Translations under genes and position numbers: made by a program
IMG/VR virus record: IMGVR_UViG_3300046665_000548
Location: 62,001-126,000 of that record
Reading direction: 5' to 3' (one strand)
DNA length: 64,000 nt
Notes under the pieces: generated by a model
Told to the model about the DNA's origin: nothing
Databases searched by the model: none
Seen by the model: only the letters and a program-made list of their open reading frames with translations
Shown here: positions 21,210 to 55,636 of the stretch, piece by piece
Layout of the letters: each line of letters begins with the position of its first letter
How positions within the stretch are numbered: the stretch's first letter is position 1

Positions 21210-21277
21210 AAAAAAGGCCGCCCTCAAGGCGGCCCAAGTCAAGGGAGGAAACGCCCATCGCGCGTCGCGATGGAACG
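21208..21277 (-). ncRNA. suhB/MmgR-type alphaproteobacterial small RNA
   Basis: Minus strand: hairpin, then GGGCGTTTCCTCCCTTGACTT, then GGGCCGCC-TTGA-GGGCGGCC and T8; TTGACA-N17-TAAAAG promoter at 21311-21283. Confidence 0.75.
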
Positions 21278-21329
21278 GCCATCTTTTATGTCGATTTCCC
21301 CGTGGTGTCAAATAAATTCGTAATTTGGT

Positions 21330-42301: not shown

Positions 42302-43666
42302 ATGATCGAAAAACTAGACCATTGGTACGACGCGCAGATGCGTCGCTTCCTTGCCCAAATTGTCAGAGCCTTCTCTGGATTTCAATATACAACGGGCTGG
42401 AAGGACGGGCAGGCACCTCAGGCCATGCAGGTTCCGTGTCGTTTGGCGTCAACGGACCGAATGGTCGCGAATATGATCAAAAATGGTTCCGAGAACACCC
42501 TGAATACGGTCCCGATGATCGTCATCTATCAGACTGGTATTGCCGGTCGCCGCCAGGATGTGCAGAACCTTAACCACGTCGATTCCCGTGTTGTTCAAGA
42601 ACGCGCCATCGATCCGGTCAGCGGGAAGTACACACCCCTGAAGGGTCACGGCTACACCGTGCAGAGAATGATGCCACGTCCGTTCGAAATGACGGTCAAC
42701 GTTGATATCTGGACTTCAACCACAGATCAAAAGCATCAGCTATTCGAGCAGATCGCAACCATCTTCTATCCGGACATCTACATCCAGAATTCCGACAATG
42801 CTCTCGACTGGACCGCGATGACCACAATGGAATGGGTTGACTGCCAATGGTCGTCCAGAGCTATTCCGGTCGGCACTAACGACGAAATCGACGTGTTGAC
42901 GATCAGTTTCCGTCTTCCAATCTGGATTTCTCCTCCCGCCAAGGTCATGCAGATGAAGCTCATCGAGCAGGTCATCTCGAACATCCATGACGGTCGCCAC
43001 ACCGACGAGATCAGCGCAGACAATCATCTGTTCCGGCACATCACGACGCCGGGCAATCACTCGGTTCGTGTAGAAAACGGCAAAATACTTCTTCTCGGTC
43101 CAGAGGGGTCTGAGCATGGAGCAGACGGCAACACCTATACGTGGAAAAAGCTCATCGATCTGTACGGCGTTCTACGGCCGACACTGAGCACCATTCACCT
43201 TCTTACTAGTACCGATTTGGACGACCGCACGCGCGATGTCATCGGCACGATCCAGTACGACAACAACAATCCAAACGAAATCTTCTTCCAGATCGATCCG
43301 GACACTTTACCGCAGAATACGATGGACCCAATTAATGCGGTCATCGATCCGCGCGAGCATTGGGCCGGTAAGGGTCTTCCAGCCGCAACAGAAGGTCAGC
43401 GTTATCTTCTTCTGCACAGCATAATGCCAGACTCCATCGCCTGGGGCTCTCTCGAAGCAAACGAGAACAGCATCATTGAGTATCAGAACGGAGAGTGGAT
43501 CGTTGCTTTCGACGGCAAACCAGAAACCAACCCAACGCCACAACGCGTGCTGAACCTCGGTAGCTCACGCCAACTAAAGTTCGCTACCAGCGTTGAAGAC
43601 CAGTGGGAATGGTCGCTCGCCATCGACGGAACCTACTACCCCGGCACTTGGCGTCTCGACCTCTGA
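42302..43666 (+). CDS. Tail terminator/sheath stabilizer (T4 gp15-like) with a C-terminal extension
   Basis: WYDAQMRRF, DIWT...QK.QLFEQI...F.P, LTISFRLPIWISPPAKV. Confidence 0.8.
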   Translation: MIEKLDHWYDAQMRRFLAQIVRAFSGFQYTTGWKDGQAPQAMQVPCRLASTDRMVANMIKNGSENTLNTVPMIVIYQTGIAGRRQDVQNLNHVDSRVVQERAIDPVSGKYTPLKGHGYTVQRMMPRPFEMTVNVDIWTSTTDQKHQLFEQIATIFYPDIYIQNSDNALDWTAMTTMEWVDCQWSSRAIPVGTNDEIDVLTISFRLPIWISPPAKVMQMKLIEQVISNIHDGRHTDEISADNHLFRHITTPGNHSVRVENGKILLLGPEGSEHGADGNTYTWKKLIDLYGVLRPTLSTIHLLTSTDLDDRTRDVIGTIQYDNNNPNEIFFQIDPDTLPQNTMDPINAVIDPREHWAGKGLPAATEGQRYLLLHSIMPDSIAWGSLEANENSIIEYQNGEWIVAFDGKPETNPTPQRVLNLGSSRQLKFATSVEDQWEWSLAIDGTYYPGTWRLDL

Positions 43667-45472
43667 TGCAAATCTCGCAACAGATCGTTCAATAGTCTTG
43701 ACGTTGCGATTGCACAAATTCGCGATTTTACGGAACGAATAACCCAGTTCCGTTCGAATGCGATACCACATGTGACGGCGCGCACCCTGATTGGGATCGT
43801 GCCGCCCACCCTCGCGTAACAAGTCTTCAACAGTCAGGCCGTATTCATCGACAATCTCGTTCATGATCCGATGTCCGCCCGGCATCAGTCGATCCATTTC
43901 GGCGGCCCTCTTGGGATCAACAATCGCAATGTGCAGGCCGCTCTCTTTGTCCCTACACAGATCAGGACGCAGCCGCTGAGGCTCAATGCCCATCACGCGG
44001 CTCACAGTGGCCACCATCGGTTCGCTTACGTAGCCGCGCCTTGCCCACTGGAAAATCGCGCTGTCGTGCTTCACGCCCAACATAGCGGCAAGCCGCTGTC
44101 TGTTTCCAGCACGCGCAATGATCTCATCAAGCGCCGCTTTTGCGACAGAGATATCCTCGGGTTCCCAATGCAGAAACGGGCGAGGCTTCGATGACGAACC
44201 TCGACGCCGGAATTTGATGCGATCAGGAACGGCACCAGGAATATCCTTGTACGTCATACCACGGAGCATCGCCCCCATCGCCTGATTATCGATACCAAGC
44301 TCTTTCTCAAGAGTGCGCATCGTGACTTGACCAGTGGCATACATGCGCCGAGCCCAAATAACCTGCTCGTCAGTTAACAGTCTGAATTTACCCTTCGCAG
44401 AAACAGCTTCCGGCACAAAACCGTAGTGGTTTCCGGACAAGCATTGCTGAATATACCCTTTCGACAGTCCGTGAGCTTCCGCAAGTTGCTGCTGCGTGAC
44501 GTTGCCGTTCTGATAGACGAGCCGCATGAACAGCACTACCTCGGGCTCAAGACTTCTCTCAACTCCGGCAACGATGCGCTCGACCGGATTAGGAATTTTC
44601 GCAAACGGACCATGGCCAAGCAGCGCCTTACGGATCATCTGAGGATGCGAGTTATACTTGTCGGCCATCTCAAACAGAGTGACTTTACCCAGATTCACCC
44701 GGTAGAAATGACGCATTTCCTGGACTTCTCGTACTCGGAAATACGCAGCATTAGAGAGAACTTCCTCTGCCTCAAAACCTTTATATCGGTCGTACGGCTT
44801 TTCTCCCTTGAGCATTTTCTGTATCGTGCGGCGCTTAGTCTTAAGCTCAGCCGCAAGATGATCGAGAGCAATTCTTCCCTTGGCGGCTTCGTAACGCTGA
44901 CGCAAAGCCAAAACTGTATCTTTGTCAAACCTCACAGGAGGTGCGATCTCATCCGCAGTCAAAGCGCCAGGAATATTGCTGAACGAACCATTACCGAGCA
45001 ACAGGCTTTCAAAGTTGCGACCGGTCATGCCGTGCTTTCTTCCGAGCACAGCTAAGTGTCCGCCATACTTACGATAGCGATTACGGATAGCTCTGACCTG
45101 CTTGTCAGAAATGTCCGCAGCACGAAGACGGGGCAAAGCCTCCGCTACCTGCTTGTAAGTCTTCCCCGTCAGCAGATCGCGAACAGCACCCCGCGTAATA
45201 CCGAGTTCGGATTCAAGTTGTTCAGTAGTCTTCTCGCCCTTTTTGAAAGCTAGTCGCGAAGCGATAACCGTTTCGTCACTAAACGATGTGGATGGTAGAA
45301 CCGATACCGGATCAGGAACATGCGCATATGACTTGCCAAGCAGCAGACTATTGACTGAGGATCGAACCATGGAGAGTTCAGCCATAAGTTGCTGAACAGA
45401 CTTTTCTCCATTTTTCACGGCCTGACGCGCCGCCGATACCACCTCGTCGCTGAGTTTGCGCTTGCCCATCAT
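43574..45472 (-). CDS. Multi-HTH DNA-binding protein: 7 HTH repeats, a Cro/YdaS-like HTH and a DnaA C-terminal-like domain
   Basis: Repeats of L(S/T)DE.V..xR....G......LA...G.....I...L.G..Y..(V/I)P; LRPDL; ARRHMWY..R..LGYSF.KIA...NR..TI. Confidence 0.75.
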   Translation of the reverse strand: MMGKRKLSDEVVSAARQAVKNGEKSVQQLMAELSMVRSSVNSLLLGKSYAHVPDPVSVLPSTSFSDETVIASRLAFKKGEKTTEQLESELGITRGAVRDLLTGKTYKQVAEALPRLRAADISDKQVRAIRNRYRKYGGHLAVLGRKHGMTGRNFESLLLGNGSFSNIPGALTADEIAPPVRFDKDTVLALRQRYEAAKGRIALDHLAAELKTKRRTIQKMLKGEKPYDRYKGFEAEEVLSNAAYFRVREVQEMRHFYRVNLGKVTLFEMADKYNSHPQMIRKALLGHGPFAKIPNPVERIVAGVERSLEPEVVLFMRLVYQNGNVTQQQLAEAHGLSKGYIQQCLSGNHYGFVPEAVSAKGKFRLLTDEQVIWARRMYATGQVTMRTLEKELGIDNQAMGAMLRGMTYKDIPGAVPDRIKFRRRGSSSKPRPFLHWEPEDISVAKAALDEIIARAGNRQRLAAMLGVKHDSAIFQWARRGYVSEPMVATVSRVMGIEPQRLRPDLCRDKESGLHIAIVDPKRAAEMDRLMPGGHRIMNEIVDEYGLTVEDLLREGGRHDPNQGARRHMWYRIRTELGYSFRKIANLCNRNVKTIERSVARFASEVETPSAGVVGSVDGERPFPLVFNAGSEL

Positions 45473-46053
45473 TATTCCCAGTTTAGATTGAACGTACTGT
45501 TGTCGAACGCAGTAGTAGCTTGCATCAATCGCGCACGAGTCGCGTCGGCTTCTTCTTTCGAGACGATCTCGAAGTAATGCTTCGCCGCCTTCTGCTTGTA
45601 ATGGTTTTCGATCTTGCCTCCGGGCTGCATCATGCGGTCGTAAGCGTAATTGCGAACAATTTCTCGAACCTCTTCGCGCGCGACAATGATGTCCCATTTC
45701 TTGATGAGAAACGGACCACGCCCGGCAGTAATGGCTTTCGAGACCAAATGAGGAAGCGGCTGAAGCGTCCATTCAGTTCTGGGAGTTGCCTCCCAAACAT
45801 CGTCGCCCTCCCAGTCTTCAAGTACCGATCCATCGTGATTGCCGTCGCGAAAGCTGAAGGTGAATTCTTTGTCGCCAAGCGTGATAATGCCGTGCGCACG
45901 TGCATTAATCGCGTCGATGCGATCATGTTCCAAGATCATGATACAATCGTGCTTTCCCCACTGGCCCGTAGCTTCAGCAAGCATCATCAGCACATCTTCG
46001 CGCTGATCTTCGGGAACATCTCGCTCAAAACGTTCTTGTGCAGTCGTTGTCAT
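45472..46053 (-). CDS. Hypothetical protein
   Basis: GAGGGG RBS; coupled to the next gene. Confidence 0.65.
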   Translation of the reverse strand: MTTTAQERFERDVPEDQREDVLMMLAEATGQWGKHDCIMILEHDRIDAINARAHGIITLGDKEFTFSFRDGNHDGSVLEDWEGDDVWEATPRTEWTLQPLPHLVSKAITAGRGPFLIKKWDIIVAREEVREIVRNYAYDRMMQPGGKIENHYKQKAAKHYFEIVSKEEADATRARLMQATTAFDNSTFNLNWE

Positions 46054-46323: not shown

Positions 46324-46441
46324 GGTTTAACGGTATATCGACAGTCCTGAGCCGTAAACCAAAAAATATTCGCTTTCTTTGCATTTTTCAGTTGTAACGG
46401 TTTGGGGAACTGTGTATAAATACGTTCTCTTGATTGGTTAC

Positions 46442-46516
46442 GCGAATGTAATTCAGTGGTAGAATGCCTCGTTGCCAACGAGGTCGCCGTGGGTTCGAGC
46501 CCCACCGTTCGCTCCA
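46442..46516 (+). tRNA. tRNA-Gly(GCC)
   Basis: Cloverleaf; anticodon arm CCTCG-TTGCCAA-CGAGG; GGTTCGA; encoded CCA. Confidence 0.92.
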
Positions 46517-46533
46517 GTCAGAAAGTTGTTTGT

Positions 46534-46610
46534 CGCGGGGTGGAGCAGCCCGGTAGCTCGTTAGGCTCATAACCTAAAGGTCGGTGGTTCAAATCCATCT
46601 CCCGCAACCA
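46534..46610 (+). tRNA. Initiator tRNA-fMet(CAT)
   Basis: CGCGGGG start with C1:A72 mismatch; TTAGG-CTCATAA-CCTAA; CCA end. Confidence 0.92.
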
Positions 46611-46655
46611 AACATTGAAAGAAATTGCCGACCTCAAAGGGTTGGCCAAGAGTGA

Positions 46656-46732
46656 CGCGGGATGGAGCAGTCAGGTAGCTCGTCGGGTTCATATCCCGGA
46701 GGTCGGTGGATCGAAGCCATCTCCCGCAACCA
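46656..46732 (+). tRNA. Second, variant initiator-type tRNA-Met(CAT)
   Basis: CGCGGGA start; TCGGG-TTCATAT-CCCGG; T-loop ATCGAAG; CCA end. Confidence 0.85.
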
Positions 46733-46766
46733 TTAAACGGTCTCCTTGTCCCGATAGACAGGAAAT

Positions 46767-46842
46767 GGGGCCTTAGCTCAGTTGAGAGAGCGATTCGCTG
46801 GCAGTGAATAGGTCGTCAGTTTGATCCTGACAGGCTCCACCA
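46767..46842 (+). tRNA. tRNA-Ala(GGC)
   Basis: G3:U70 pair; loop CTGGCAG; atypical T-loop TTTGATC; CCA end. Confidence 0.85.
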
Positions 46843-46850
46843 CATAGTTC

Positions 46851-46925
46851 GGGCTAGTAGTTCAGCGGGAGAACGTTGCCTTTGCAAGGCAAATGTCGGG
46901 GGTTCAATTCCCTCCTGGTCCACCA
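46851..46925 (+). tRNA. tRNA-Ala(TGC)
   Basis: G3:U70 pair; TTGCC-TTTGCAA-GGCAA; CCA end. Confidence 0.88.
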
Positions 46926-47118
46926 CACTGCGCCTGTTTGACCTTCGGGAAGACAGGCTTTTATTACGGATGAGACCGGTTTACACCTACGGGGCCAAAC
47001 CGGGCCAATCTCACCGTAAGGCCCCTGGGGCTTAGTCCAGGCGCGGCCGGAGCGAAATCCGGTAGAGGGCTGCACGGGACGCCGGATAGTCTGCGGAGGG
47101 GTGGGAACCCCTTCCAAT

Positions 47119-47194
47119 GCGAACGTAGCTCAGTTGGTAGAGCGTCTGATTTCCAATCAGAATGTCGTGAGTTCGAATCTCATCGTTCGCTCCA
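47119..47194 (+). tRNA. tRNA-Gly(TCC)
   Basis: TCTGA-TTTCCAA-TCAGA; GTTCGAAT; CCA end. Confidence 0.92.
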
Positions 47195-47734
47195 TTTTTT
47201 CTTCCATATCTCAATGTAATTCCTAACCTTCTCTTCAACGAGAGGGCGGAATTTGCTGTGCCAATACTGATGGTGCGTAGGGCACATAGGTATTAGGTTC
47301 GCTGGATCATTGTTCTGATGATTTTCATCAAGATGATGCACGGAAACGATATTTCTCTCATCACACACTACGCATTGTTTTTCGTGATGCCCGAAGCAGA
47401 TAGTGGTGTATTTTGTGATCTCGATATTTCTTCTGGATGCCCAGTCGAGTCCTGATCCTCTGTGATTTGAGCAACTGCGGCTACAAAAATACTTTTCCTT
47501 TAGAGGATACTGTTTTTCTCTTTCCCTTATCGAAAAATCCTTCGCGCAAGCATGGCACGCTACTGTGTAGGTTTTCATATCCCCAAGCTGTTTGCTGATG
47601 TATCGCCGTTGGGCATCCGCAAGTGCTTGAGTATCGTTCCTCTTTGGATTATGAGAACACCAACGAGAATGATTGGCTTTCTGACTGGTCGAGGAATATT
47701 CGAAGGTTTCGTCGCAATGAGCACATTTCCACAT
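47180..47734 (-). CDS. HNH homing endonuclease with Zn-finger modules
   Basis: CxxC motifs, FCSRSC, VHHLDENHQNNDPANLIPMCPTHH; TAAATA 4 nt upstream. Confidence 0.88.
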   Translation of the reverse strand: MWKCAHCDETFEYSSTSQKANHSRWCSHNPKRNDTQALADAQRRYISKQLGDMKTYTVACHACAKDFSIREREKQYPLKEKYFCSRSCSNHRGSGLDWASRRNIEITKYTTICFGHHEKQCVVCDERNIVSVHHLDENHQNNDPANLIPMCPTHHQYWHSKFRPLVEEKVRNYIEIWKKKWSER

Positions 47735-47836
47735 ACCTTATTTATGTGGAGTGCTAAGCTATCGCTTAATCAGATGCGATATCGATGTATTCCTAGCTAG
47801 GGGGTGTGTACTTGGCGCGAATATACGGCTTATCAT

Positions 47837-48061
47837 ATGCGTACTGATCTCACCGAAAAAGAGCACAAGTTGCTTCACCTGCTTTGGAATAATGGCCTTA
47901 AGGGTTCTATGTGTTGGATTCGTCGGGATGAAGATGAGGACACGAATTCCAGTTTAACATCTCTCATTGAGCGTGGATTAGTGGCGCGAAAAGATAACGG
48001 CTGGTTCATCTATATTACTGAAGACGGCGAGTTTTTGATTCGCTTCTACGGGAAACCCTGA
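47837..48061 (+). CDS. MRTDL winged-helix paralog 1
   Basis: MRTDLT..E..LL...SLIERGLV...ITEDG...R.YGKP. Confidence 0.75.
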   Translation: MRTDLTEKEHKLLHLLWNNGLKGSMCWIRRDEDEDTNSSLTSLIERGLVARKDNGWFIYITEDGEFLIRFYGKP

Positions 48062-48273
48062 TGCGCACTGATCTAACCGAGATGGAGCACAAAATGCTCT
48101 ACGACATCTCAAATGACACAGGGTATTGTTGGATTAATCGGTATGAGCATCCGAAAGCCAATGCTTCAATGGCATCTCTTATCGAACGTGGCTTAGTGAG
48201 AAAAGAAAAAAGCTTTTTCGTCAAGATCACTGAGGACGGCGCGCTTTTGGCACGTCTCTATGGGAAGCCCTAA
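48061..48273 (+). CDS. MRTDL winged-helix paralog 2
   Basis: Same pattern; TGATG coupling. Confidence 0.75.
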   Translation: MRTDLTEMEHKMLYDISNDTGYCWINRYEHPKANASMASLIERGLVRKEKSFFVKITEDGALLARLYGKP

Positions 48274-48518
48274 TGCGCACTGATCTGAACAACAACGAGC
48301 TTTGGTTGCTTGAATTTATTAATGACTGCGCGAGTGGCCGCTGTCACCCTCCTCGCGCTTACACGATTCGTGAGGTAGTGATTCTTCAAAAAGCACCTCT
48401 TTTAAGGTTGCTCGCGGATGGCATGGTAATAAAACGACCAGGAGAGAATCCCGCTATCGTGGACATTTACCCCACTGACGATGGCTTATTCATGCTTAGG
48501 CTTCATGGGGTGATCTGA
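48273..48518 (+). CDS. MRTDL winged-helix paralog 3 (divergent)
   Basis: Same termini; TAATG coupling. Confidence 0.7.
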   Translation: MRTDLNNNELWLLEFINDCASGRCHPPRAYTIREVVILQKAPLLRLLADGMVIKRPGENPAIVDIYPTDDGLFMLRLHGVI

Positions 48519-48739
48519 TGCGAACTGATCTCACCGATGATGAGCACTGGTATCTTATCTACGTCGATTTTCATTCTGATCAAGGAAGAAAGTTTATCGG
48601 GTGGGTTTCTTCTTTCCACAAATCCGTAGACGCTTTGGTTGAGCGCGGCCTGATCGAGAAAACGGAAGACAAAAACAGTGTTTGGATTAAATCCACTCCA
48701 GATGGCGTACTCTTGGCCCGACTCTACGGAGAGCCGTAA
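48518..48739 (+). CDS. MRTDL winged-helix paralog 4
   Basis: Same pattern. Confidence 0.75.
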   Translation: MRTDLTDDEHWYLIYVDFHSDQGRKFIGWVSSFHKSVDALVERGLIEKTEDKNSVWIKSTPDGVLLARLYGEP

Positions 48740-48951
48740 TGCGCACTGATCTCACCCACCCGGAGCACATGCTACTCCAGGAAATATCGGATCATAGTGG
48801 TTTTGCTTGGCTTTCTCCGGATGATGACAAGGAAACGAATTCTTGCATAGCATCTCTCATTGATCGTGGATTGGTGAGGATACAAAATGTCTGGTTCATC
48901 TATATTACTGATGATGGCGAGCTTTTGCTTCGTATGTACGGAGAGCCCTGA
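48739..48951 (+). CDS. MRTDL winged-helix paralog 5
   Basis: Same pattern. Confidence 0.75.
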   Translation: MRTDLTHPEHMLLQEISDHSGFAWLSPDDDKETNSCIASLIDRGLVRIQNVWFIYITDDGELLLRMYGEP

Positions 48952-49169
48952 TGCGCACTGATCTCACCGAAATGGAGCACAAGTTGCTTCACCACATATC
49001 GCGAGTCGATAAGCAAGGTTTCGCTTGGCTTTCTCGTGACGAAGATGAGGTCACGAATTCTTGTCTGTCATCTCTCGTTGATCGTGGATTAGTGACGAGA
49101 GAAAATGGCTGGTTCATCTCCATTACCGAGGACGGCAAGCTTTTGATTCGTATGTACGGGAAGCCGTAG
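48951..49169 (+). CDS. MRTDL winged-helix paralog 6
   Basis: Same pattern; close to paralog 1. Confidence 0.75.
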   Translation: MRTDLTEMEHKLLHHISRVDKQGFAWLSRDEDEVTNSCLSSLVDRGLVTRENGWFISITEDGKLLIRMYGKP

Positions 49170-49173
49170 CGTC

Positions 49174-49179
49174 TAAATA
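49174..49179 (+). promoter_or_regulatory. Late promoter box TAAATA (representative)
   Basis: Also at 5093, 15864, 19325, 20327, 32890, 42292, 46417 and 53450, and on the minus strand before 30492, 41196, 47734, 58861, 25153 and 19209; resembles the T4 gp55 late promoter TATAAATA. Confidence 0.75.
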
Positions 49180-49184
49180 CTCGC

Positions 49185-49877
49185 ATGAACATGCGCGACA
49201 TCATCACTCTCATTGAAACTCAAGAGCTAGACGAGATTGAACTCGGTGGCCAGTTGGACAGTTCGTTTGTTGATGATCTCGACAAGAAAGATTTGAGCAG
49301 CGATCAGCTTGATCTTTTCGAACCAACCACGACGGGTCAGCCGCGTCTTCCCGCCAATATGAAGTTGATCGGCCGTACGGGTGCGTATTACGTGGCGCAA
49401 CGCACCGGGCCGCTTCCTGGGCAATCTCAATCCAAAGACGAACATCTATACGTGTTCATCAAAGACAATAAAGCTGCGGGCTATATCTGCCTGTATCCGT
49501 GGAGCGGCGATCACGTCAATTATCCGCATCAAGTGAGCTACCAGCCTGATCTGCACGGCAAGGGTCTTCGCACGGCGGCTGTAATGGTTATGCCGGATTT
49601 TCGCGGACAGAACCTTGGCCCGACTATGTACAAATGGGTTTTGGAGAACGTTTGCGACTACATCATTGCCGATGCCACTCACACCCAGGGCGGCGCTGCA
49701 CTCTGGAAGAGAATGCGGGCGATGAAAAATGTGTTTGCGGTAGAGATTTGGAATGCTGACAAATACGAGACGCAACCACGTTGGCACAGGCATGTGTATG
49801 ATCGTGACCACTACATTCCGTGGATCACATTAAGAGGGCGCGAACATAACATTCGGACCGGGGAGGACGACGAATGA
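49185..49877 (+). CDS. Tagged protein with a GNAT acetyltransferase-like domain
   Basis: MNMRDIITLIE tag; VMPDFRGQNLGPTMY acetyl-CoA motif A. Confidence 0.75.
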   Translation: MNMRDIITLIETQELDEIELGGQLDSSFVDDLDKKDLSSDQLDLFEPTTTGQPRLPANMKLIGRTGAYYVAQRTGPLPGQSQSKDEHLYVFIKDNKAAGYICLYPWSGDHVNYPHQVSYQPDLHGKGLRTAAVMVMPDFRGQNLGPTMYKWVLENVCDYIIADATHTQGGAALWKRMRAMKNVFAVEIWNADKYETQPRWHRHVYDRDHYIPWITLRGREHNIRTGEDDE

Positions 49878-50365
49878 ATATGCGCGATCTTATGACGCTC
49901 GTTGAGGCGCGCGGAGGAACGAAGCTTTATCACGGTTCAAAGAAATCGTTTCCTGTTGGGTTTGTTCTTGAGCCTCAGAAAGATGGCTATGTTCACGCCA
50001 ACAGTGGCGATGAGTTTGATGCGCAAATCAAGATCACGGAGCAGTTGCTCGAAAAATTTCGACCATCAGATCAATTATCCAGATACGAGTCTGTTTTCGT
50101 AACAACAACCCCCGCTACTATTGAGTATGCTGGCGGCAGTACAAACCACGTTTATGTGGTCGAGCCACTTGGACCAATCTTTTTCGGCAATCTCTACTGG
50201 TACAGTCAGATCGAGAATGCAGCATTTGATATCGATGACTATGATCCAGATGAATTGCGTTCTTGGGCGCAAAACTACTGGGCTGCTAAACCATCTGGTC
50301 AATCAGAAACGTATGAGTATCGAACCAATAAGGCGCGGATCGTCAAAGAGGTAAAATGGCGATGA
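49874..50365 (+). CDS. Tagged protein with an ADP-ribosyltransferase (Arr-like) domain
   Basis: MNMRDLMTLVE tag; LYHGS..FPVG..L, VFVT, VYVVEPLG, terminal YEY. Confidence 0.65.
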   Translation: MNMRDLMTLVEARGGTKLYHGSKKSFPVGFVLEPQKDGYVHANSGDEFDAQIKITEQLLEKFRPSDQLSRYESVFVTTTPATIEYAGGSTNHVYVVEPLGPIFFGNLYWYSQIENAAFDIDDYDPDELRSWAQNYWAAKPSGQSETYEYRTNKARIVKEVKWR

Positions 50366-50673
50366 ACATGCGCGACCTGATCTCTATCTGTGAAGCTGAA
50401 GACCTCAAAGCGTTGATGGCCAGCATTCGCGAACGTAACAATGCGGCTGAGGTTATGCTGCGGGATGCACTGTCTAACTCCTCACGACTGGCGCTTGTTC
50501 ACCCCGAGGGCAAGAAGATTTTGGTCAGCAAGTCTCTCGACCCCGACTACAAGTGGCGTCTCACTTACTTTGACGACGCTGGTCCATCGGGCCACGTCGA
50601 ATATCGTGATATCACGCGCGAGATGTCCAACGAAATTGCGATGGCTCTCAAGAACGGGTACGTGCGATCATGA
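50362..50673 (+). CDS. Tagged protein with an unknown domain
   Basis: MNMRDLISICE tag; WRLTYFDDAGPSGH. Confidence 0.7.
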   Translation: MNMRDLISICEAEDLKALMASIRERNNAAEVMLRDALSNSSRLALVHPEGKKILVSKSLDPDYKWRLTYFDDAGPSGHVEYRDITREMSNEIAMALKNGYVRS

Positions 50674-51038
50674 AGATGCGCGATCTTATCGACCTTACCG
50701 AGAGTGCAATTACAGCGACATCCATGGATGGACGCAAAGTTATTATTCTAAAGAACCCTTCTCCGGTTGTTCTGCTTGATAGGTTGAGGCGAACCAGGTC
50801 GTTGCGTGGAATTGTAGTTGGCCAAGATTTGTTTTGGGCCAACAGTTACTCTTTGATTCATGTTCAAATAGGCAAAGCCGTTGGTGCTGCTGATGGTTAC
50901 GGGGATGCCCGGCTCGACCTTAAATACAAAGACGGCGGCGCGAAGCTTTTCATTCTACCGCATAATAAATCGTTCGATGAAATTTCTGCACTGCCTCAGG
51001 TACAGAGATTACAGAACTACATTGCGGAGAAGACTTGA
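50670..51038 (+). CDS. Tagged protein with a KNP-RG-W-H domain
   Basis: MKMRDLIDLTE tag; ILKNPS..LRGIV..LFW....LIH. Confidence 0.7.
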   Translation: MKMRDLIDLTESAITATSMDGRKVIILKNPSPVVLLDRLRRTRSLRGIVVGQDLFWANSYSLIHVQIGKAVGAADGYGDARLDLKYKDGGAKLFILPHNKSFDEISALPQVQRLQNYIAEKT

Positions 51039-51670
51039 TGAATATGCGCGATCTCATGAAGCTTTGTGAGGCTCGGTATAGCCCACCCAAGCCACTCGAT
51101 GGCGGCCCGAAGATCGATGATAACAATCAGTACGGTTCATCGGCTCGTCGCCCAATGTTGCTCAGTCTTCCCGCTAGCCAACCGCAAAGTGCCTACCTTT
51201 TTCACGGTGCTCCTCTCGATCATCTCGTGTCTATTTTGCGAGACAATTGTATCAGCACCGGCATCAATTGGCGCGGTGAAGGCGAGCGCGTAGCATGCAC
51301 CCGCAATTGGAAGATAGCGCTAGGCTTTGGAAACCAAGGCGACTTTGATATGTTTCCGGCATTCCTGGTGCTGGACTGGGCTAAGCTAGCAAAGAAGTAT
51401 CACATCGTGTCTTACGAAGACTGTGACATGCATGGAGAGGCATGGAAAACTAGCGAACAGGAAGAAGCTGTCTGCGGAGAGATCACGCCTCTCAGTTCTT
51501 ATTTGATTTCGATCAATGTTGCGCCGGAAGTTCTTCTGGCTGCAATGCAGGATCGCGAATATGCTGATTGGGTTGTTGGCGAAAAGAGTTTCTTCTCGTC
51601 TCCTAGATATTGGTTCGCGGCTCTTCAGAGATTGTCTCAATCTCCAAAACTGAACGCTTGGAGACCCTGA
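51038..51670 (+). CDS. Tagged protein with an ADP-ribosyltransferase-like domain
   Basis: MNMRDLMKLCE tag; YLFHG, VACTRN..IA..F, LVLD, EQEE. Confidence 0.6.
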   Translation: MNMRDLMKLCEARYSPPKPLDGGPKIDDNNQYGSSARRPMLLSLPASQPQSAYLFHGAPLDHLVSILRDNCISTGINWRGEGERVACTRNWKIALGFGNQGDFDMFPAFLVLDWAKLAKKYHIVSYEDCDMHGEAWKTSEQEEAVCGEITPLSSYLISINVAPEVLLAAMQDREYADWVVGEKSFFSSPRYWFAALQRLSQSPKLNAWRP

Positions 51671-52407
51671 TGGATATGCGCGATCTCATGATCCTATTCG
51701 AGGGCAAAGCAGTAAAGGTTGAGATCGATGATCAACTGCCATTCCGGGTATACATCAATCCAACTCCGCAGCAGATGATGTCTGGTCGTCAGCGCGGTTT
51801 GATCGACACTGAAGGCAACCTGTATGTTTGGGACGCTTATCAGGCGACTCACGACAGTGTTGCGAACGAATTGGGTATCACCTGGGAAAGCGCATTGCTT
51901 CTTGAACCGGACAAGATTGAGATCGTTGGCGGCGACAAAAATCTTGAAAACTGGGTTCATATCAATCGAGCATACGGTGGCAAAATGCCTTTTGTTGAAA
52001 ACTCGCAGCAATATCCGGCCGAGACGTTCATGCATGAAGCCGAAGCCAGCTTGGCCCCCATGTCCGGAAACGTCTCCGCAATCCTAATACCTCAAGACGG
52101 CGATACCGTTGAGATTAATCACATCAGCGCGATGCCGATGCGCTCGGGTTGGGGCACAAAAGCAATGAATATTATCGTTTCGTTGGCAGACCGATGCGGC
52201 GTGACCCTAACGCTTGAGGTCGATAATGACTCGGACGATTGGGGCCATGACGACGAAGACGAGAGCCAACCCACTGACGATACAGCATCAATTCCGTCCA
52301 ACGATGATTTGATGGGTTGGTATGGCGGCTATGGATTTTCTGTTGCTGACGGTCTTTCCTCGCGCATTCAGATGGTAAGAAAGCCGAATACGGCTTTACC
52401 AATTTAA
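51670..52407 (+). CDS. Tagged two-domain protein: KNP-RG-WDA-H domain plus GNAT-like domain
   Basis: MDMRDLMILFE tag; INPT..RGLID..VWDAYQATH; RSGWGTKAM..IV.LADRCGVTLTL..LMGWYGGYGF. Confidence 0.7.
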   Translation: MDMRDLMILFEGKAVKVEIDDQLPFRVYINPTPQQMMSGRQRGLIDTEGNLYVWDAYQATHDSVANELGITWESALLLEPDKIEIVGGDKNLENWVHINRAYGGKMPFVENSQQYPAETFMHEAEASLAPMSGNVSAILIPQDGDTVEINHISAMPMRSGWGTKAMNIIVSLADRCGVTLTLEVDNDSDDWGHDDEDESQPTDDTASIPSNDDLMGWYGGYGFSVADGLSSRIQMVRKPNTALPI

Positions 52408-52458
52408 CTTCCCGGTGTAGTGCTTACCGCTTCTCTCAACCCGAGGAGGCTCTACTAC

Positions 52459-53385
52459 ATGAAGTCTAGCAGTTTAGCGTTGATAGACCACACGGCGGTG
52501 ACTGCATTGCAGAATCTGCCAAAGACCCGGAAGATTACTCGGCAAGTCGCCGGGTTCGATGTCGAGGACGTAGTACCGTATACGTCTGATGATATCACAC
52601 AGGGTTTCAAACAAGACGCCGACGCTTTGCGGGCTTCGCTGTCCAGTGCGGGCATCACGCCTCTGGCGGTTATTCCCACGGTCTGGTGGGATCGGATTGT
52701 TACCCGATCCAAGCTGGTCGATTTCGAGCCGTCTGGGAAAGGAACGGTCGGCGTCCATCTCTCCGAATATGCGACGGCAATCAAACGCGGATGGTATAAG
52801 ACGATCTCGTTTTTCGCCACATGGTTTACGTTGGCGTTCGCCGTATCCGCTATTCTCTATCACACCGCTCCGATCAACATGTATGGCGTCGTGTTGCTAC
52901 CTTTGATCCCGACCGTGCTCGCGACTGCGGCGCTGGCCAATTGGTGGGAATCGGCGTGGGCATGGATCGTATCCAGTGTCTACACGATGACGCGCGGCGG
53001 CAACAAACGGCTTCTTGTCGAAATATTGAGAAAGAGCAAGGACGGCTACAGCGCACGGCATGTTGGCGTGACTCTTCCTCGGCCTCCTTCTAACGTCATG
53101 GACATCTTGCTCAAAGCTGATCGTGCACAGATGAGAATGCGCGTGGCGGCAGTTCCGGAAGCGGTTCAGTTGGCACAGAGCCCGCGTCAGCTTATCGCAA
53201 ACGAGGTCAGAGACCAGTGGTCGCAGGAAGCTCTGGAGCGTCGCGAAGCGGCTCGCGTGCGTGCGCTTGATCCGATCATCTACGTCATGAAGGGTTCGGC
53301 GGTGGCCGTGATCGCTCAGTTCGGTGACTTTCCCATCGAGCAGCGCATCGTGGAAGAGGTTGTTCAGAGCCGTCCTGTCGCCTAA
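52459..53385 (+). CDS. Membrane protein (2 TM)
   Basis: GAGGAGG RBS; C-terminal DPIIY...AVIAQFGDFP.E. Confidence 0.7.
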   Translation: MKSSSLALIDHTAVTALQNLPKTRKITRQVAGFDVEDVVPYTSDDITQGFKQDADALRASLSSAGITPLAVIPTVWWDRIVTRSKLVDFEPSGKGTVGVHLSEYATAIKRGWYKTISFFATWFTLAFAVSAILYHTAPINMYGVVLLPLIPTVLATAALANWWESAWAWIVSSVYTMTRGGNKRLLVEILRKSKDGYSARHVGVTLPRPPSNVMDILLKADRAQMRMRVAAVPEAVQLAQSPRQLIANEVRDQWSQEALERREAARVRALDPIIYVMKGSAVAVIAQFGDFPIEQRIVEEVVQSRPVA

Positions 53386-53406
53386 CTACCGAACGATACG
53401 AACACG

Positions 53407-53440
53407 AAAGGGCTGGCCGAAAGGCTGGCCCTTTTTCTTT
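53407..53440 (+). terminator. Intrinsic terminator
   Basis: AAAGGGCTGGCC-GAAA-GGCTGGCCCTTTTT. Confidence 0.75.
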
Positions 53441-53461
53441 TGGCAGTCATAAATACTCACC

Positions 53462-53923
53462 ATGAATATGCGCCATTTCATTTCGCTTTGCGAAAGCCAC
53501 TTGTCAGATGCTTTTGAGGGGATCGACAAGCCAACATTAGTTCTCCCGGCCGGGACCGTTCTTTTTCACGGCACGGATCGCCCGGCCAGTGAGTGGGACC
53601 CGCGTGTTGACCCGATTTGGGGACCGGCATGGTTTGGAGCCGACTTTGAGGTGGCTAACAGTTACGCCAAATTTCAGCGCAGTGGCGAGAATGGCGAGCC
53701 GTACATCATTCAGTATAGCACCAACCGTAGCCTCAAGCTTCTAGAGGCTTCTGCGCCAGAAATTGCGGCGGTGATGGATGAATTGTACGACACCTACATG
53801 ACGGATGAAATCGCGGGTGCCATGCACGATCTTGGCTTCGAAGGCTGGCACATCAAAGATACCGAGGTCATGATCGCGGACGGCAACGCGCTTGATTTCG
53901 TCAAGATATTGAAGGTGCAATAA
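53462..53923 (+). CDS. Tagged protein with an ADP-ribosyltransferase-like domain
   Basis: MNMRHFISLCE tag; LPAGTVLFHGT, AWFG....A..YA, GFEGW...TEVMI. Confidence 0.65.
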   Translation: MNMRHFISLCESHLSDAFEGIDKPTLVLPAGTVLFHGTDRPASEWDPRVDPIWGPAWFGADFEVANSYAKFQRSGENGEPYIIQYSTNRSLKLLEASAPEIAAVMDELYDTYMTDEIAGAMHDLGFEGWHIKDTEVMIADGNALDFVKILKVQ

Positions 53924-54525
53924 TGGATATGCGCTCTCTCATTAGTCTTTGTGAAGACTACTCCGGACCTCCTTTCAAACCACGCAGCAAGTCACCAAAG
54001 TCATTCACGGTTCAGGACAACCTTGTGATTGTCCAGGACAGTGACAAAACCATTTGGGCCTACAACGGAACGCCACGTTCGAACTGGCATCCTGAGGCAA
54101 ATGGCAAAAAGATCGGCGGCGTGCTGCTCCAAGACCATGCTTCCCACGGTGAGGATGCGTGGTCAGTTTATAAGTCGGGCGTCGATAAGCCTTATCAGCG
54201 CAAGGGAGTTGCAAGAGCGCTCTACACGCAAGCCGAACAGAATGCTGCCGCTAAGGGCAAGTCGTTCGTACCATCGGGCTCCGTGTCGGATGATGCATTC
54301 CATTTCTGGAGCAATTTTAGGCCAGAGCGTATTGCAAAGGATGGGCGCAACTGGGCTCAGCATTACGTTGGCAAGCAGGTTCACTTTCAGGATCGCGACT
54401 GGGTAATTACTAGCGCAGCAAGAAGCGACGGAAGATACTTTATGGCGAAACTAGTGAACGGAGACAACACTACGGGTATCCCTCGCCAGATCGTCATCGA
54501 CCAGCTTGGGGATTTCTACAAATGA
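53923..54525 (+). CDS. Tagged protein with a GNAT acetyltransferase-like domain
   Basis: MDMRSLISLCE tag; VDKPYQRKGVARALY. Confidence 0.75.
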   Translation: MDMRSLISLCEDYSGPPFKPRSKSPKSFTVQDNLVIVQDSDKTIWAYNGTPRSNWHPEANGKKIGGVLLQDHASHGEDAWSVYKSGVDKPYQRKGVARALYTQAEQNAAAKGKSFVPSGSVSDDAFHFWSNFRPERIAKDGRNWAQHYVGKQVHFQDRDWVITSAARSDGRYFMAKLVNGDNTTGIPRQIVIDQLGDFYK

Positions 54526-55046
54526 ATATGCGCTACTTGATGAATCTCTGCGAATCTCAAGACCCAGAGATCGAAAAACTTTTAAAGATGGACCCTTTCA
54601 GCAAGGGCAGTGCGTACACTCCGCACTCTCGCGAGAAGCAACTTAAGGCGAAAGAGGCAAGTGCTGCTACGAGAGAATTGAAGGCGATCATCAAGGACGC
54701 AAAACAGTCCGGCGTAGTCATTGAACTTTATCCGTCTGTCCAGACGTACAGCAGCGACATTCCTATGAAATGGATTGAGAACAACTCAGTCAAAGGTACC
54801 GCCGCCAAGTATATGCAGATGATCTGCGATCTCGCAGATCGATACGGACTAGAATTGAACCTGCGCGCGCAGTTGGGAGAGCCGAAACTAGTCGAATACT
54901 ACAAACGCTTCGGCTTCGTTATTTCGCCAGATCAAGAAGCGGCAGTCAAACTTGGTCTATACGGACGAGATGACATCCCAGGAAACAAACTAATCGGAAC
55001 GTCGCCATTTATGTGGCGTCTTCCAAGAACGGAGCAGACCTTATGA
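54522..55046 (+). CDS. Tagged protein with a GNAT-like domain
   Basis: MNMRYLMNLCE tag; KGTAAKYMQMICDLADRYGLELNL..LVEYYKRFGF. Confidence 0.7.
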   Translation: MNMRYLMNLCESQDPEIEKLLKMDPFSKGSAYTPHSREKQLKAKEASAATRELKAIIKDAKQSGVVIELYPSVQTYSSDIPMKWIENNSVKGTAAKYMQMICDLADRYGLELNLRAQLGEPKLVEYYKRFGFVISPDQEAAVKLGLYGRDDIPGNKLIGTSPFMWRLPRTEQTL

Positions 55047-55636
55047 ACATGCGAGACCTGATGAGGCTGTGTGAAGATGCAGCAACGCCATTCCAACCAG
55101 AAGCGCCCGCACCTCAAGACGCCGCGCCAGAACAAACTCCGTTCGAGAAGTGGTTTGCTGGTTCAAAGATTGTCGATGCTTCCGGCAATCCTCTCAAAGT
55201 CTATCATGGAACGTCGAAGGATCAGAATTTTCGGGCGTTCAAGATGAACAAGAACGGTATTTGGTTCACAGCCGATCCCGCCGAAGCGTCTCAATATTCG
55301 GTAGAAAACGACAGCATGGGTCACAAGTACGACAATGGCAAGTTCAATCCCGTGCACACGGCGTCCCGTGTTATTCCCTGCTATGTGCGCGCACTCAAGG
55401 TGATGTACTACGACGTATGGCCGGATCAAATTCGTCTGGCTGATAATTACAAGCGCGCTCAAGGTATCGTGTTCGATCAACTTAGATCGCAGGGTTACGA
55501 TGCCGTAGTTACTGGTGGACTCGTAGTCGCCATTGGAAGCCCGAATCAGATCAAGTCGGCAATCGGAAATCAAAAATTCGATCCATCGAAGAAGAACATC
55601 GATGAGGATGACGACGATCCCAGCACCAAATCCTAA
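55043..55636 (+). CDS. Tagged protein with an ART-PolyVal-like ADP-ribosyltransferase domain
   Basis: MNMRDLMRLCE tag; WFAGSKIVD..GNPLKVYHGT, GIWFT..P..ASQYS, GYDAV, NQIKSAIGN. Confidence 0.75.
   Translation: MNMRDLMRLCEDAATPFQPEAPAPQDAAPEQTPFEKWFAGSKIVDASGNPLKVYHGTSKDQNFRAFKMNKNGIWFTADPAEASQYSVENDSMGHKYDNGKFNPVHTASRVIPCYVRALKVMYYDVWPDQIRLADNYKRAQGIVFDQLRSQGYDAVVTGGLVVAIGSPNQIKSAIGNQKFDPSKKNIDEDDDDPSTKS

What the first reader, a model, noticed from the sequence alone, without database searches (positions are those of the whole stretch)
47837..49169. Six-copy tandem array of small winged-helix genes (MRTDL family)
Seen: six consecutive 70-81 aa ORFs, each linked by TGATG or TAATG overlaps, begin ATGCG(C/T/A)ACTGATCT and mostly end (I/S)T.DG....R.YG(K/E)P. 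Copies 1, 5 and 6 are visibly similar in DNA, while copy 3 is much diverged and the middle segment varies most. L(I/V)(E/D)RGL(V/I)...IT.DG is a MarR/wHTH signature. Inference: a gene accordion with diversified recognition surfaces, acting as regulators or defence-protein binders, directly upstream of the effector cassette.
Basis: partly seen in the sequence, partly recalled or inferred. Interest (0 to 1): 0.65.

Follow-up and report, generated by a model that had tools for sequence, protein, structure and literature searches.

The report
Six tandem mini winged-helix genes
A 608-kb giant phage, related to Sinorhizobium and Agrobacterium jumbo phages, carries six back-to-back genes (once seven) for 70-81-residue proteins that are only the core of a MarR-type winged-helix domain; the family is real, old and almost unique to this phage, but what the copies bind is not known.

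Summary
Window 47837-49169 (+) has six intact paralogous ORFs of 70-81 aa. They are joined by TGATG/TAATG stop-start overlaps, and each starts with the box ATGCGNACTGATCT. I also found the decayed 3' end of a seventh copy just upstream, beside an HNH endonuclease gene.

Two AlphaFold models and all fold searches place the proteins on the MarR winged-helix core (Z 9.4-10.0). They lack the MarR dimerisation helices and the wing Asp-x-Arg, most are acidic, and none reaches a Pfam cut-off.

The copies are old (dS 0.46 to saturated) and under purifying selection (omega 0.26-0.54; scaffold 0.1-0.3, variable helix and wing tip 0.3-1.0). This is a stable paralogue array, not a recent accordion.

A full HMMER search of 1.84 billion representatives found two true relatives. 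Both lie on one 652-bp metagenome contig, again in tandem (at least three copies) and again just after a tRNA gene.

The function is not shown. My best guess is a lineage-specific set of small nucleic-acid-binding regulators with different targets. Protein binding is a serious rival.

The downstream "effector cassette" carries a shared 11-residue leader ending (L/I)-x-E, in a phage with a T4 gp21-type prohead protease. It probably encodes capsid-packaged, injected proteins.

The parts
46417..46423 (+). TAAATAC promoter-like motif (within TATAAATAC) just before the tRNA cluster. It is the only such motif on the + strand upstream of the array.
   Evidence: One search lists the site. In one search, 46 of 66 genomic TAAATAC sites are followed within 45 nt by the ATG of an ORF of at least 60 aa, against a mean of 20% for 60 permuted 7-mers.
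46442..47194 (+). Cluster of six tRNA genes: Gly-gcc, Met-cat x2, Ala-ggc, Ala-tgc, Gly-tcc.
   Evidence: ARAGORN and Rfam RF00005. In the only relative, a tRNA 3' end also lies about 95 nt before the first copy.
47180..47734 (-). HNH endonuclease gene (184 aa) inserted between the tRNA cluster and the array. Its 3' end overlaps tRNA-Gly-tcc by 15 nt on the opposite strand. It has an ATAAATA motif 4 nt before its ATG.
   Evidence: Pfam HNH_2 at 22.3 bits against a cut-off of 21, and PHROGs HNH endonuclease families. Sequence read. The relative's contig has no such insert.
47784..47836 (+). Relic of a seventh copy ('copy 0'). Only its last ~15 codons remain (...LGGVYLARIYG), with an in-frame stop and a degraded YG.P-stop/ATG junction that has no Shine-Dalgarno sequence.
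   Evidence: Translation and hmmsearch. Local alignment: 16 of 17 bases match the 3' end of copy m2 of L007, a 45-nt alignment matches the 3' end of copy 4, and p is about 0.004 against shuffles.
47837..48061 (+). Copy 1, 74 aa, pI 5.6.
   Evidence: AF2 model at pLDDT 75.4 shows a wHTH fold. Best MarR-core match Z 9.4.
48061..48273 (+). Copy 2, 70 aa, pI 7.9.
   Evidence: Sub-threshold Pfam hits to HTH_27, TrmB and EarA.
48273..48518 (+). Copy 3, 81 aa, the most diverged copy (27-34% identity to the others), with a longer wing. It ends ...RLHGVI.
   Evidence: AF2 model at pLDDT 83.5, pTM 0.73. Z 10.0, rmsd 2.1 A over 70 residues to a MarR core. Atlas TM 0.69-0.75 to MarR clusters.
48518..48739 (+). 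Copy 4, 73 aa, pI 5.2.
   Evidence: Sub-threshold MarR_2 hit. One 151-nt public contig spans the copy 3/4 junction.
48739..48951 (+). Copy 5, 70 aa, pI 4.4.
48951..49169 (+). Copy 6, 72 aa, pI 5.8. Youngest pair with copy 5 (dS 0.46).
   Evidence: The ESM Atlas's own model matches HTH_45, MarR and Fe_dep_repress clusters at TM 0.74-0.82.
49174..49180 (+). TAAATAC promoter-like motif in the 15-nt gap between the stop of copy 6 and the first leader-bearing gene.
49185..52407 (+). Six contiguous genes with unrelated bodies. All start M-(N/K/D)-M-R-D-(L/I)-x-x-(L/I)-x-E. The first has a GNAT domain. This is context, not part of the wHTH family.
53406..53435 (+). Strong intrinsic-terminator-like hairpin (13-bp stem, T tail). 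It is the first one downstream of the array on the + strand.

Best explanation
The region holds six intact, translationally coupled paralogous genes, plus the stump of a seventh. Each encodes a 70-81-residue protein that is only the winged-helix core of a MarR-type regulator: helix, short strand, a reduced first HTH helix, recognition helix, beta-hairpin wing and a short C-terminal helix.

Shown:
- The fold.
- The common descent of the copies by old tandem duplication.
- Purifying selection on the structural scaffold, with much freer change in the segment before and at the start of the recognition helix and at the wing tip.
- Stop-start overlaps, with a GGAG/GGGA Shine-Dalgarno sequence embedded in the conserved YG(E/K)P codons 7-8 nt before the next ATG.
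- Conservation of the layout 'tRNA gene(s), then tandem copies' in a second, distant phage contig.
- Loss of most of a seventh copy next to an HNH endonuclease gene.

Inferred: the six proteins are made together from one polycistronic message. That message starts at or after the tRNA cluster. Each protein acts as a small nucleic-acid-binding factor with its own target. This would be a lineage-specific expansion of phage-specific transcription or DNA-organising factors, of the kind jumbo phages often carry.

The confidence figure is for this functional reading. That the array is a real family of MarR-core wHTH genes I hold at about 0.9.
For: - Fold: AF2 models of copy 1 (pLDDT 75) and copy 3 (pLDDT 83.5). 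VIA-align top hits are almost all MarR cores, at Z 9.4 and 10.0 with rmsd 2.1-2.9 A over 69-72 residues. Foldseek gives TM 0.65-0.76. The Atlas gives TM 0.69-0.82.
- Sequence: 10 of the 13 weak profile hits in PDB are MarR-family regulators. They align the end of the recognition helix, the wing and the motif T-E-D-G-x-L-L. The sub-threshold Pfam hits are nearly all wHTH families.
- Selection: omega is 0.26-0.54 overall, 0.11-0.32 on the scaffold and 0.32-0.98 on the variable parts.
- Positive residues kept at backbone-contact positions of MarR proteins: R46 in ERGL and R/K51-52 after GLV (the position mapping is my own knowledge of MarR-DNA complexes).
- Coupling signals read.
- Conserved tandem layout after a tRNA in L007.
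- Literature: 92% of jumbo phages encode their own HTH/wHTH transcription factors (1-15 each), and phage G has a ~35-copy expansion of a small DNA-binding Zn ribbon (PMC7824862).
Against: - Five of six copies and both outside relatives are acidic (pI 4.4-6.0).
- The wing is three residues shorter than in MarR and lacks the Asp-x-Arg whose Arg enters the minor groove.
- In copies 1, 5 and 6 the first HTH helix is replaced by a short acidic loop (D/E-rich) and is modelled with low confidence.
- The MarR dimerisation helices are absent. A homodimer prediction gave no verdict, which is not evidence either way.
- No Pfam, NCBIfam or PHROGs family reaches its threshold.
- No DNA target, operator repeat or expression data were found.
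Confidence: 0.4

Rival explanations
1. The mini winged helices are protein-binding modules, not nucleic-acid binders. Each would be a diversified binder that neutralises or retargets a host protein (a defence component or another host factor), or that handles the neighbouring packaged effectors.
For: - Acidic pI in 7 of 8 family members.
- Acidic loop in place of the first HTH helix, no wing Arg and no dimerisation helices.
- Extreme rarity and fast turnover typical of conflict genes: only one other contig among 1.84 billion representatives, and absent from the closest isolates Phosso and Atu_ph07.
- Location beside at least 10 genes for probable injected proteins, including GNAT and ART-PolyVal enzymes.
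- The variable surface has omega up to about 1.
Against: - No partner was identified.
- No omega clearly above 1.
- Block arrangement (six wHTH genes, then six leader genes) rather than interleaved cognate pairs.
- A promoter-like motif separates the array from the cassette.
- Winged helices of the MarR type are overwhelmingly DNA binders (fold hits).
Confidence: 0.3
2. The MRTDL proteins are themselves virion cargo. Their conserved N-terminus would be a capsid-targeting or processing signal like that of the downstream genes.
For: - The N-terminus M-R-T-D-L is invariant, and Glu9 is invariant in the six copies.
- The phage has a T4 gp21-type prohead protease, which cleaves after Glu (PMC5694885).
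- The genes next door carry a leader that starts similarly (M-x-M-R-D-L).
Against: - An (L/I)-x-E motif at a fixed place is present in only 3 of 6 copies and in neither outside relative.
- Residues 5-13 align with the MarR 'L-T-x-x-Q-x-x-x-L' start of the first core helix and are modelled as that helix, so cleavage would destroy the fold.
- The relatives have Gln in place of Arg2.
Confidence: 0.07
3. A recent 'gene accordion': copy number was amplified under acute selection and the copies are now diversifying.
For: Tandem head-to-tail layout. A relic seventh copy shows that copy number has changed.
Against: - Pairwise dS runs from 0.46 (youngest pair) to saturation, and DNA identity is 45-79%.
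- There are no long identical tracts beyond the 14-nt start box.
- Purifying selection acts throughout.
- Tandem copies that are equally diverged from each other exist in a distant relative.
Confidence: 0.05
4. The ORFs are non-functional leftovers or an assembly artefact.
For: No expression data. Copy 1 has no recognisable Shine-Dalgarno sequence. Read support is limited to one 151-nt contig.
Against: - Six open frames of the same length class, with omega well below 1.
- Conserved fold-defining residues.
- Homologues open and in tandem in an independent sample.
- The copies are too different to be collapsed or expanded by an assembler.
Confidence: 0.03

Closest known systems
MarR family transcriptional regulators (Pfam PF01047, PF12802, PF13463)
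   Same: Same winged-helix core topology and the same core sequence pattern: L-T-x-x-E/Q-x-x-L-L at the first helix, L-(I/V)-(E/D)-R-G-L-(V/I) at the end of the recognition helix, and (I/L)-T-x-D-G-x-L-L after the wing. Best structural matches are Z 9.4-10.0.
   Different: Half the size (70-81 aa against about 140-160). No N- and C-terminal dimerisation helices and no ligand pocket. The wing is 3 residues shorter and lacks Asp-x-Arg. The first HTH helix is reduced in the short copies. Mostly acidic. Best Pfam score is 15.5 bits against a cut-off of 27.
Small stand-alone winged-helix proteins of viruses and plasmids (SSV1 F-93, TubR; unnamed phage clusters in BFVD and the ESM Atlas)
   Same: Single-domain wHTH proteins of about 70-100 aa encoded by mobile elements. 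TubR scores Z 9.4/8.8. F-93 and many uncharacterised phage proteins appear in Foldseek. A 96-aa phage cluster scores TM 0.75.
   Different: No detectable sequence relationship. Those proteins are single-copy and, where studied, dimeric DNA binders (my own knowledge). This one is a six-copy array.
Lineage-specific expansions of small DNA-binding proteins in jumbo phages (for example the ~35 Zn-ribbon copies of Bacillus phage G; PMC7824862)
   Same: A giant phage multiplies a minimal DNA-binding-type domain into many paralogues of unknown targets.
   Different: Different fold (wHTH, not Zn ribbon). Strictly tandem and translationally coupled. Only six or seven copies.
Poxvirus-type gene accordion
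   Same: Tandem head-to-tail copies with evidence of gain and loss (the relic copy).
   Different: The copies are old and diverged, under purifying selection, and the array is conserved in a distant relative.
T4 internal-protein locus next to the tRNA genes (context only)
   Same: In T4 the hypervariable ipI locus lies beside the tRNA cluster, which carries a homing endonuclease gene (my own knowledge). T4 internal proteins share only a short capsid-targeting sequence that gp21 removes (PMC3012670, PMC5694885). Here the order is tRNA cluster, HNH gene, wHTH array, then at least 10 genes with a shared leader ending (L/I)-x-E. The phage has gp21-, gp22- and gp23-like head genes.
   Different: T4 has no wHTH array there. 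The MRTDL proteins do not carry the leader.

Membership tests
Winged helix-turn-helix fold | Helix - strand - helix - recognition helix - beta-hairpin wing topology. | tested here: met
   Models of copy 1 and copy 3. Z 9.4-10.0 to wHTH cores over 69-72 residues. Caveat: the first HTH helix is short and of low confidence in the 70-74-aa copies.
MarR family (Pfam PF01047/PF12802) | Score at or above Pfam's gathering cut-off. | tested here: not met
   Best MarR_2 scores are 15.5 and 15.0 bits against a cut-off of 27. Two copies have no hit at all. The profile against PDB MarR chains reaches only E 0.011.
MarR family (Pfam PF01047/PF12802) | N- and C-terminal helices (alpha1, alpha5, alpha6) that form the obligate dimer interface. 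| tested here: not met
   The proteins span only the equivalent of MarR residues about 30-113 (chain ranges). There are 6 residues before the first core helix and about 10 after the wing.
MarR family (Pfam PF01047/PF12802) | Conserved Asp-x-Arg in the wing, whose Arg contacts the minor groove. | tested here: not met
   In the alignment to OhrR and a Bradyrhizobium MarR, the wing is 3 residues shorter and has (E/D/K)-N-x at that place. The role of the motif is from my own knowledge.
Gene accordion (recent adaptive amplification) | Near-identical copies, with copy number that differs between close relatives. | tested here: not met
   DNA identity 45-79%, dS at least 0.46. No close relatives were available to compare copy number.
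T4-type capsid-targeted internal proteins (asked for the MRTDL proteins) | A shared N-terminal leader ending in the protease site (L/I)-x-E at a fixed position. | tested here: not met
   L-T-E at residues 5-7 in only 3 of 6 copies and in 0 of 2 relatives. By contrast, all 10 downstream leader genes have it.
Sequence-specific DNA-binding transcription factor | Demonstrated binding to a defined DNA site, with an effect on transcription. | not testable with these tools
   No operator-like repeat was identified. This needs EMSA, DAP-seq or reporter assays.

The most novel reading that the evidence does not exclude
The six proteins are not transcription factors but a diversified panel of acidic, monomeric winged-helix 'decoys or adaptors'. 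Each would bind a different protein, for example host defence sensors or the neighbouring capsid-packaged effectors. They would be produced in fixed stoichiometry by translational coupling. That would be a new use of the MarR core as a protein-recognition scaffold in a phage-host conflict locus.
Probability: 0.15. Interest if true: 0.6.

Novelty: new member of a known kind. Interest (0 to 1): 0.35.

Why it matters
Giant phages carry hundreds of orphan genes, and this array shows how one such family is built and maintained. A minimal MarR-core winged helix was duplicated at least seven times. It is held in a translationally coupled string next to the tRNA genes, is conserved as an array in a second lineage, and has been eroded at one end next to a homing-endonuclease gene.

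If the copies have distinct DNA or protein targets, they offer a compact natural series for studying how a 70-residue winged helix changes specificity. Read together with the neighbouring leader-bearing genes, the array marks a T4-like 'tRNA / internal-protein' plastic region in a 608-kb phage.

As it stands it is an ordinary kind of thing, a phage-specific wHTH expansion, in an unusually neat arrangement.

Tried and rejected
- **Homodimer prediction of copy 6:** no verdict (score 0.01, mark 0.32). This is not evidence for or against binding.
- **Read support and expression:** one run held 6% of the sampled words, and only one 151-nt contig lay on the array. There were no RNA runs, so expression is untested.
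- **Relatives elsewhere, all blank:**
  - megablast against 50,697 phage records;
  - peptide-pattern scan of IMG/VR;
  - a degenerate junction pattern in IMG/VR and in JGI metagenomes;
  - the 5.8-billion word search, which returned self hits only;
  - flanking genes in IMG/VR;
  - two calls that failed because the 8-row alignment was too diverse.
- **P0009 (1146 aa, 6 stretches):** a cadherin-like repeat protein, so a compositional false positive.
- **Closest isolates Phosso and Atu_ph07:** no MRTDL homologue at E up to 1, no leader pattern, and only tRNA matches at the DNA level.
- **Phosso's six small overlapping ORFs after its tRNA-Gly:** they looked analogous, but hhalign gave probability 0.3%. 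Unrelated.
- **Gene conversion between copies:** no identical tracts beyond chance except the 14-nt start box.
- **Programmed -1 frameshift fusing the copies:** GGGAAAC occurs at one junction only and in the wrong phase (my reading). Rejected.
- **A seventh 'MRTDL' box at window 28857 (-):** it is the RTDL motif of a PTH2 peptidyl-tRNA hydrolase (Pfam E 7e-9). About 0.2 such hits are expected by chance. Coincidence.
- **Tree of the eight proteins:** too short to resolve whether the duplications predate the split of the two phages.
- **PHROGs and NCBIfam:** nothing usable.
- **Literature search for the Pfam name MLPTv:** nothing relevant.
Full report
**What the window is.** The window is bases 62001-126000 of a single 607,744-bp virus record (51.7% G+C), rated complete by CheckV.
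- Its head genes are T4-like: a gp23-type major capsid protein (PF07068, E 2.5e-93), a gp21-type prohead protease (PF03420, 95 bits) and a coiled-coil gp22-like scaffold between them.
- The capsid protein is 83.6% identical to that of Sinorhizobium phage Phosso (469 kb) and 71.7% identical to Agrobacterium phage Atu_ph07 (490 kb).
- An alphaproteobacterial sRNA family (mmgR/suhB) also matches in the window.
- A rhizobial or other alphaproteobacterial host is therefore likely. This is inference.

**The observation.**
- Six ORFs on the + strand (47837-48061, 48061-48273, 48273-48518, 48518-48739, 48739-48951, 48951-49169) encode 74, 70, 81, 73, 70 and 72 residues.
- The junctions are TGATG, TAATG, TGATG, TAATG and TGATG.
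- Each gene begins ATGCG(T/C/A)ACTGATCT. Five of six end with (I/S)T.DG....R.YG(K/E)P.
- Copies 1, 5 and 6 are the closest (72-79% DNA identity). Copy 3 is the outlier (45-49%).
- A profile of the six finds exactly these six places in the whole genome.

- *Shine-Dalgarno in the coding sequence.* The conserved YG(E/K)P codons (TACGG[A/G]GA/AA...) contain a GGAG/GGGA Shine-Dalgarno sequence 7-8 nt before the next ATG. The C-terminal motif is therefore under double constraint, and the genes are built for translational coupling.
- *Start box.* The 14-nt start box is conserved beyond the needs of the protein. Codon 3 is ACT in 6 of 6 copies, although ACT is only 20% of Thr codons in this genome. 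Codon 4 is GAT in 6 of 6. I have no tested explanation. Translation re-initiation context is the obvious candidate.
- *Relic copy.* Just upstream of copy 1, at about 47784-47836, lie the last ~15 codons of a seventh copy (...LGGVYLARIYG). It has an in-frame stop and a degraded junction. It matches the 3' end of a relative's copy at 16 of 17 bases and aligns over 45 nt with the end of copy 4 (p about 0.004). The rest of that copy is gone.
- *HNH insert.* In the place of the lost part sits an HNH endonuclease gene on the opposite strand (47180-47734). It abuts the last tRNA gene. The relative's contig has no such insert. Loss of copy 0 through this insertion is inference.

**What the proteins are.**
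- No curated family reaches threshold, but the sub-threshold Pfam hits are nearly all winged-helix families: MLPTv-like_HTH, MarR_2, HTH_27, TrmB, EarA, HTH_45 and WH_AprA. PHROGs and NCBIfam give nothing useful.
- AlphaFold models of copy 1 (pLDDT 75.4) and copy 3 (pLDDT 83.5, pTM 0.73) give the same layout. It runs helix 7-18/20, a poorly defined stretch, recognition helix 34-45 (32-48 in copy 3), a beta-hairpin wing and a C-terminal helix.
- An exhaustive structural comparison puts MarR-family cores at the top for both models: Z 9.4 and 10.0, rmsd 2.1-2.9 A, 69-72 residues. TubR and other wHTH domains follow.
- Foldseek against PDB and BFVD agrees. So do the ESM Atlas's own model of copy 6 and an Atlas shape search with copy 3.
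- A sequence profile of the family hits MarR regulators in PDB weakly (E 0.011-0.5). It aligns the end of the recognition helix, the wing and the T-E-D-G-x-L-L motif.

**Departures from MarR.**
- The proteins cover only the equivalent of MarR residues about 30-113, so the dimerisation helices are missing.
- The wing is three residues shorter and lacks the Asp-x-Arg motif.
- In the 70-74-residue copies the first HTH helix is reduced to a short loop. That loop is strongly acidic in copies 1, 5 and 6.
- pI is 4.4-6.0 for five copies and both outside relatives; only copy 2 is near neutral (7.9).

**Evolution.**
- Pairwise dS is 0.46 for the youngest pair (copies 5 and 6), 0.56-0.64 within the 1/5/6 group, and at or near saturation otherwise. 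Overall dN/dS is 0.26-0.54.
- Split by region, the scaffold (residues 1-13, 43-50, 58-74) has omega 0.11-0.32. The variable parts (14-42, 51-57) have omega 0.32-0.98. No estimate is reliably above 1.
- Apart from the start box, no identical tracts suggest gene conversion.
- This is a long-standing paralogue array with birth-and-death dynamics (the relic copy), not a recent accordion.

**Relatives.**
- The 5.8-billion-protein word search returned only the six proteins themselves.
- The exhaustive HMMER search of 1.84 billion cluster representatives added two true relatives of 73 and 80 aa (E 5.5e-8 and 2.2e-6) and one false positive.
- Both relatives lie on one 652-bp ENA metagenome contig. Its order is the 3' end of a tRNA gene, about 95 nt, copy (157-378), copy (378-620) joined by TGATG, then the start of a third copy joined by TAATG. 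The copies there begin MQTDL and end LLARIYGEP.
- The tandem, overlapping layout next to tRNA genes is therefore conserved across roughly 25-38% protein identity. The family is otherwise unseen. It is also absent from Phosso and Atu_ph07.

**Transcription context.**
- The heptamer TAAATAC behaves like a T4-type late promoter in this genome. 46 of 66 sites are followed within 45 nt by the start of a sizeable ORF, against 20% for permuted controls.
- In this stretch it occurs before the tRNA cluster (46417), between copy 6 and the next gene (49174), and after the strong terminator at 53406-53435 (53450).
- None lies directly before copy 1. No sigma-70-like site was found in the 102-nt gap before it.
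- The array may therefore be read through from the tRNA promoter, or it may use an unrecognised promoter. It is separated from the cassette by a promoter-like site. Copy 1 has no recognisable Shine-Dalgarno sequence.

**The neighbouring cassette (context).**
- Ten genes between 49185 and 55636 begin M-x-(M/I)-R-x-(I/L/F)-(I/L/M)-x-(L/I)-x-(E/D), typically MNMRDLxxLxE, as do at least nine more elsewhere in the genome. Their bodies are otherwise unrelated.
- Two have GNAT domains and one has an ART-PolyVal ADP-ribosyltransferase domain.
- T4 internal proteins share only a ~10-residue capsid-targeting sequence, which gp21 removes by cleavage after Glu (PMC3012670 and PMC5694885).
- This phage has the gp21-type protease. 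Its capsid protein has an L-N-E-A site where the T4 propeptide is cut (the T4 site is from my own knowledge).
- I read the leader as a capsid-targeting and cleavage signal, and the cassette as packaged, injected proteins. This is inference.
- The MRTDL proteins do not share this leader. Their N-terminus is the first helix of the fold.

**Function.**
- *Shown:* the fold, the descent of the copies, the pattern of selection, the coupling signals and the conserved layout.
- *Not shown:* any ligand.
- *Best reading (0.4):* a lineage-specific set of small nucleic-acid-binding factors with different targets. This fits the MarR-core fold, the retained basic residues at the end of the recognition helix and at the start of the wing, and the placement of variation on the usual DNA-reading surface. 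It also fits the known habit of jumbo phages to encode 1-15 of their own HTH/wHTH factors and to expand small DNA-binding domains (PMC7824862).
- *Main rival (0.3):* protein binding. The acidity, the lost wing Arg, the reduced first HTH helix, the absence of dimerisation helices, the rarity of the family and the conflict-type neighbourhood all point that way.
- *Minor rivals:* virion cargo (0.07), recent accordion (0.05), junk or artefact (0.03).

**Verdict.** This is a real, neatly organised and almost orphan wHTH paralogue array. It is a new member of a known kind (phage-specific winged-helix expansions). It is moderately interesting in itself. Much of its interest comes from the plastic locus it belongs to: tRNA genes, a homing endonuclease and packaged effectors.

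Noticed in passing
window 49185-55636 (+); also genome positions 142228, 142775, 144176, 181624, 250285, 254111, 258214, 522076, 522618: At least 19 ORFs of the genome (10 of them here: 49185, 49874, 50362, 50670, 51038, 51670, 53462, 53923, 54522, 55043) start with an 11-residue leader M-x-(M/I)-R-x-(I/L/F)-(I/L/M)-x-(L/I)-x-(E/D). Their bodies are unrelated; two are GNAT and one is ART-PolyVal. The phage has a T4 gp21-type prohead protease, so this looks like a capsid-targeting sequence cut after (L/I)-x-E, marking a large set of packaged or injected proteins.
   Followed up: partly
window 46417-46423, 49174-49180, 53450-53456 (+); 66 sites genome-wide: TAAATAC (often N-TAAATAC-T) behaves like a T4-type late promoter. 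70% of sites are followed within 45 nt by a gene start, against 20% for permuted 7-mers. The ATG often lies only 4-6 nt downstream, which would give leaderless or near-leaderless mRNAs.
   Followed up: partly
window 47180-47734 (-): An HNH endonuclease gene with Cys-rich N-terminal motifs is wedged between the tRNA cluster and the array. Its end overlaps tRNA-Gly(tcc) by 15 nt on the other strand, and it has an ATAAATA motif 4 nt before its start. It is probably a homing endonuclease whose insertion removed most of a seventh wHTH copy.
   Followed up: partly
window 21201-21286 (-): Rfam match to the alphaproteobacterial sRNA mmgR/suhB (RF00519), 42.8 bits against a gathering score of 41. This would be a host-type regulatory RNA carried by the phage.
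   Followed up: no
window 43574-45772 (-), true start probably near 45470: A large ORF made of about seven tandem ~55-residue helix-turn-helix repeats, with many overlapping HTH Pfam hits (MarR_2, HTH_3, YdaS, HTH_23 and others). It is a second repeated DNA-binding architecture right next to the array, here within one polypeptide.
   Followed up: no
window 28486-28926 (-): A PTH2-type peptidyl-tRNA hydrolase (Pfam E 7e-9). Its own R-T-D-L motif accounts for the only other near-copy of the 14-nt start box in the genome.
   Followed up: yes
genome 402146-413620 (-) and 584540-589209 (+), outside the window: Other tandem paralogue arrays in the same phage: eight copies of a 400-480-aa protein (plus one dispersed copy), and seven copies of 210-250-aa proteins in two interleaved families. 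Tandem expansion is a habit of this genome.
   Followed up: no
L021 5870-7354 (PV764938.1 391869-393356), Sinorhizobium phage Phosso: The closest isolate has six small (70-95 aa), mostly overlapping ORFs between a tRNA-Gly and a tRNA-Cys. They share a C-terminal ...M-L-L-K-L motif. The position is analogous, but there is no detectable relation to the MRTDL family.
   Followed up: yes
window 47837-49169, first 14 nt of each copy: The box ATGCGNACTGATCT keeps its synonymous positions (ACT 6 of 6 at 20% genomic usage; GAT 6 of 6) although dS elsewhere is near saturation. It contains GATC and supplies a TGA in the third frame. The reason is unexplained.
   Followed up: partly
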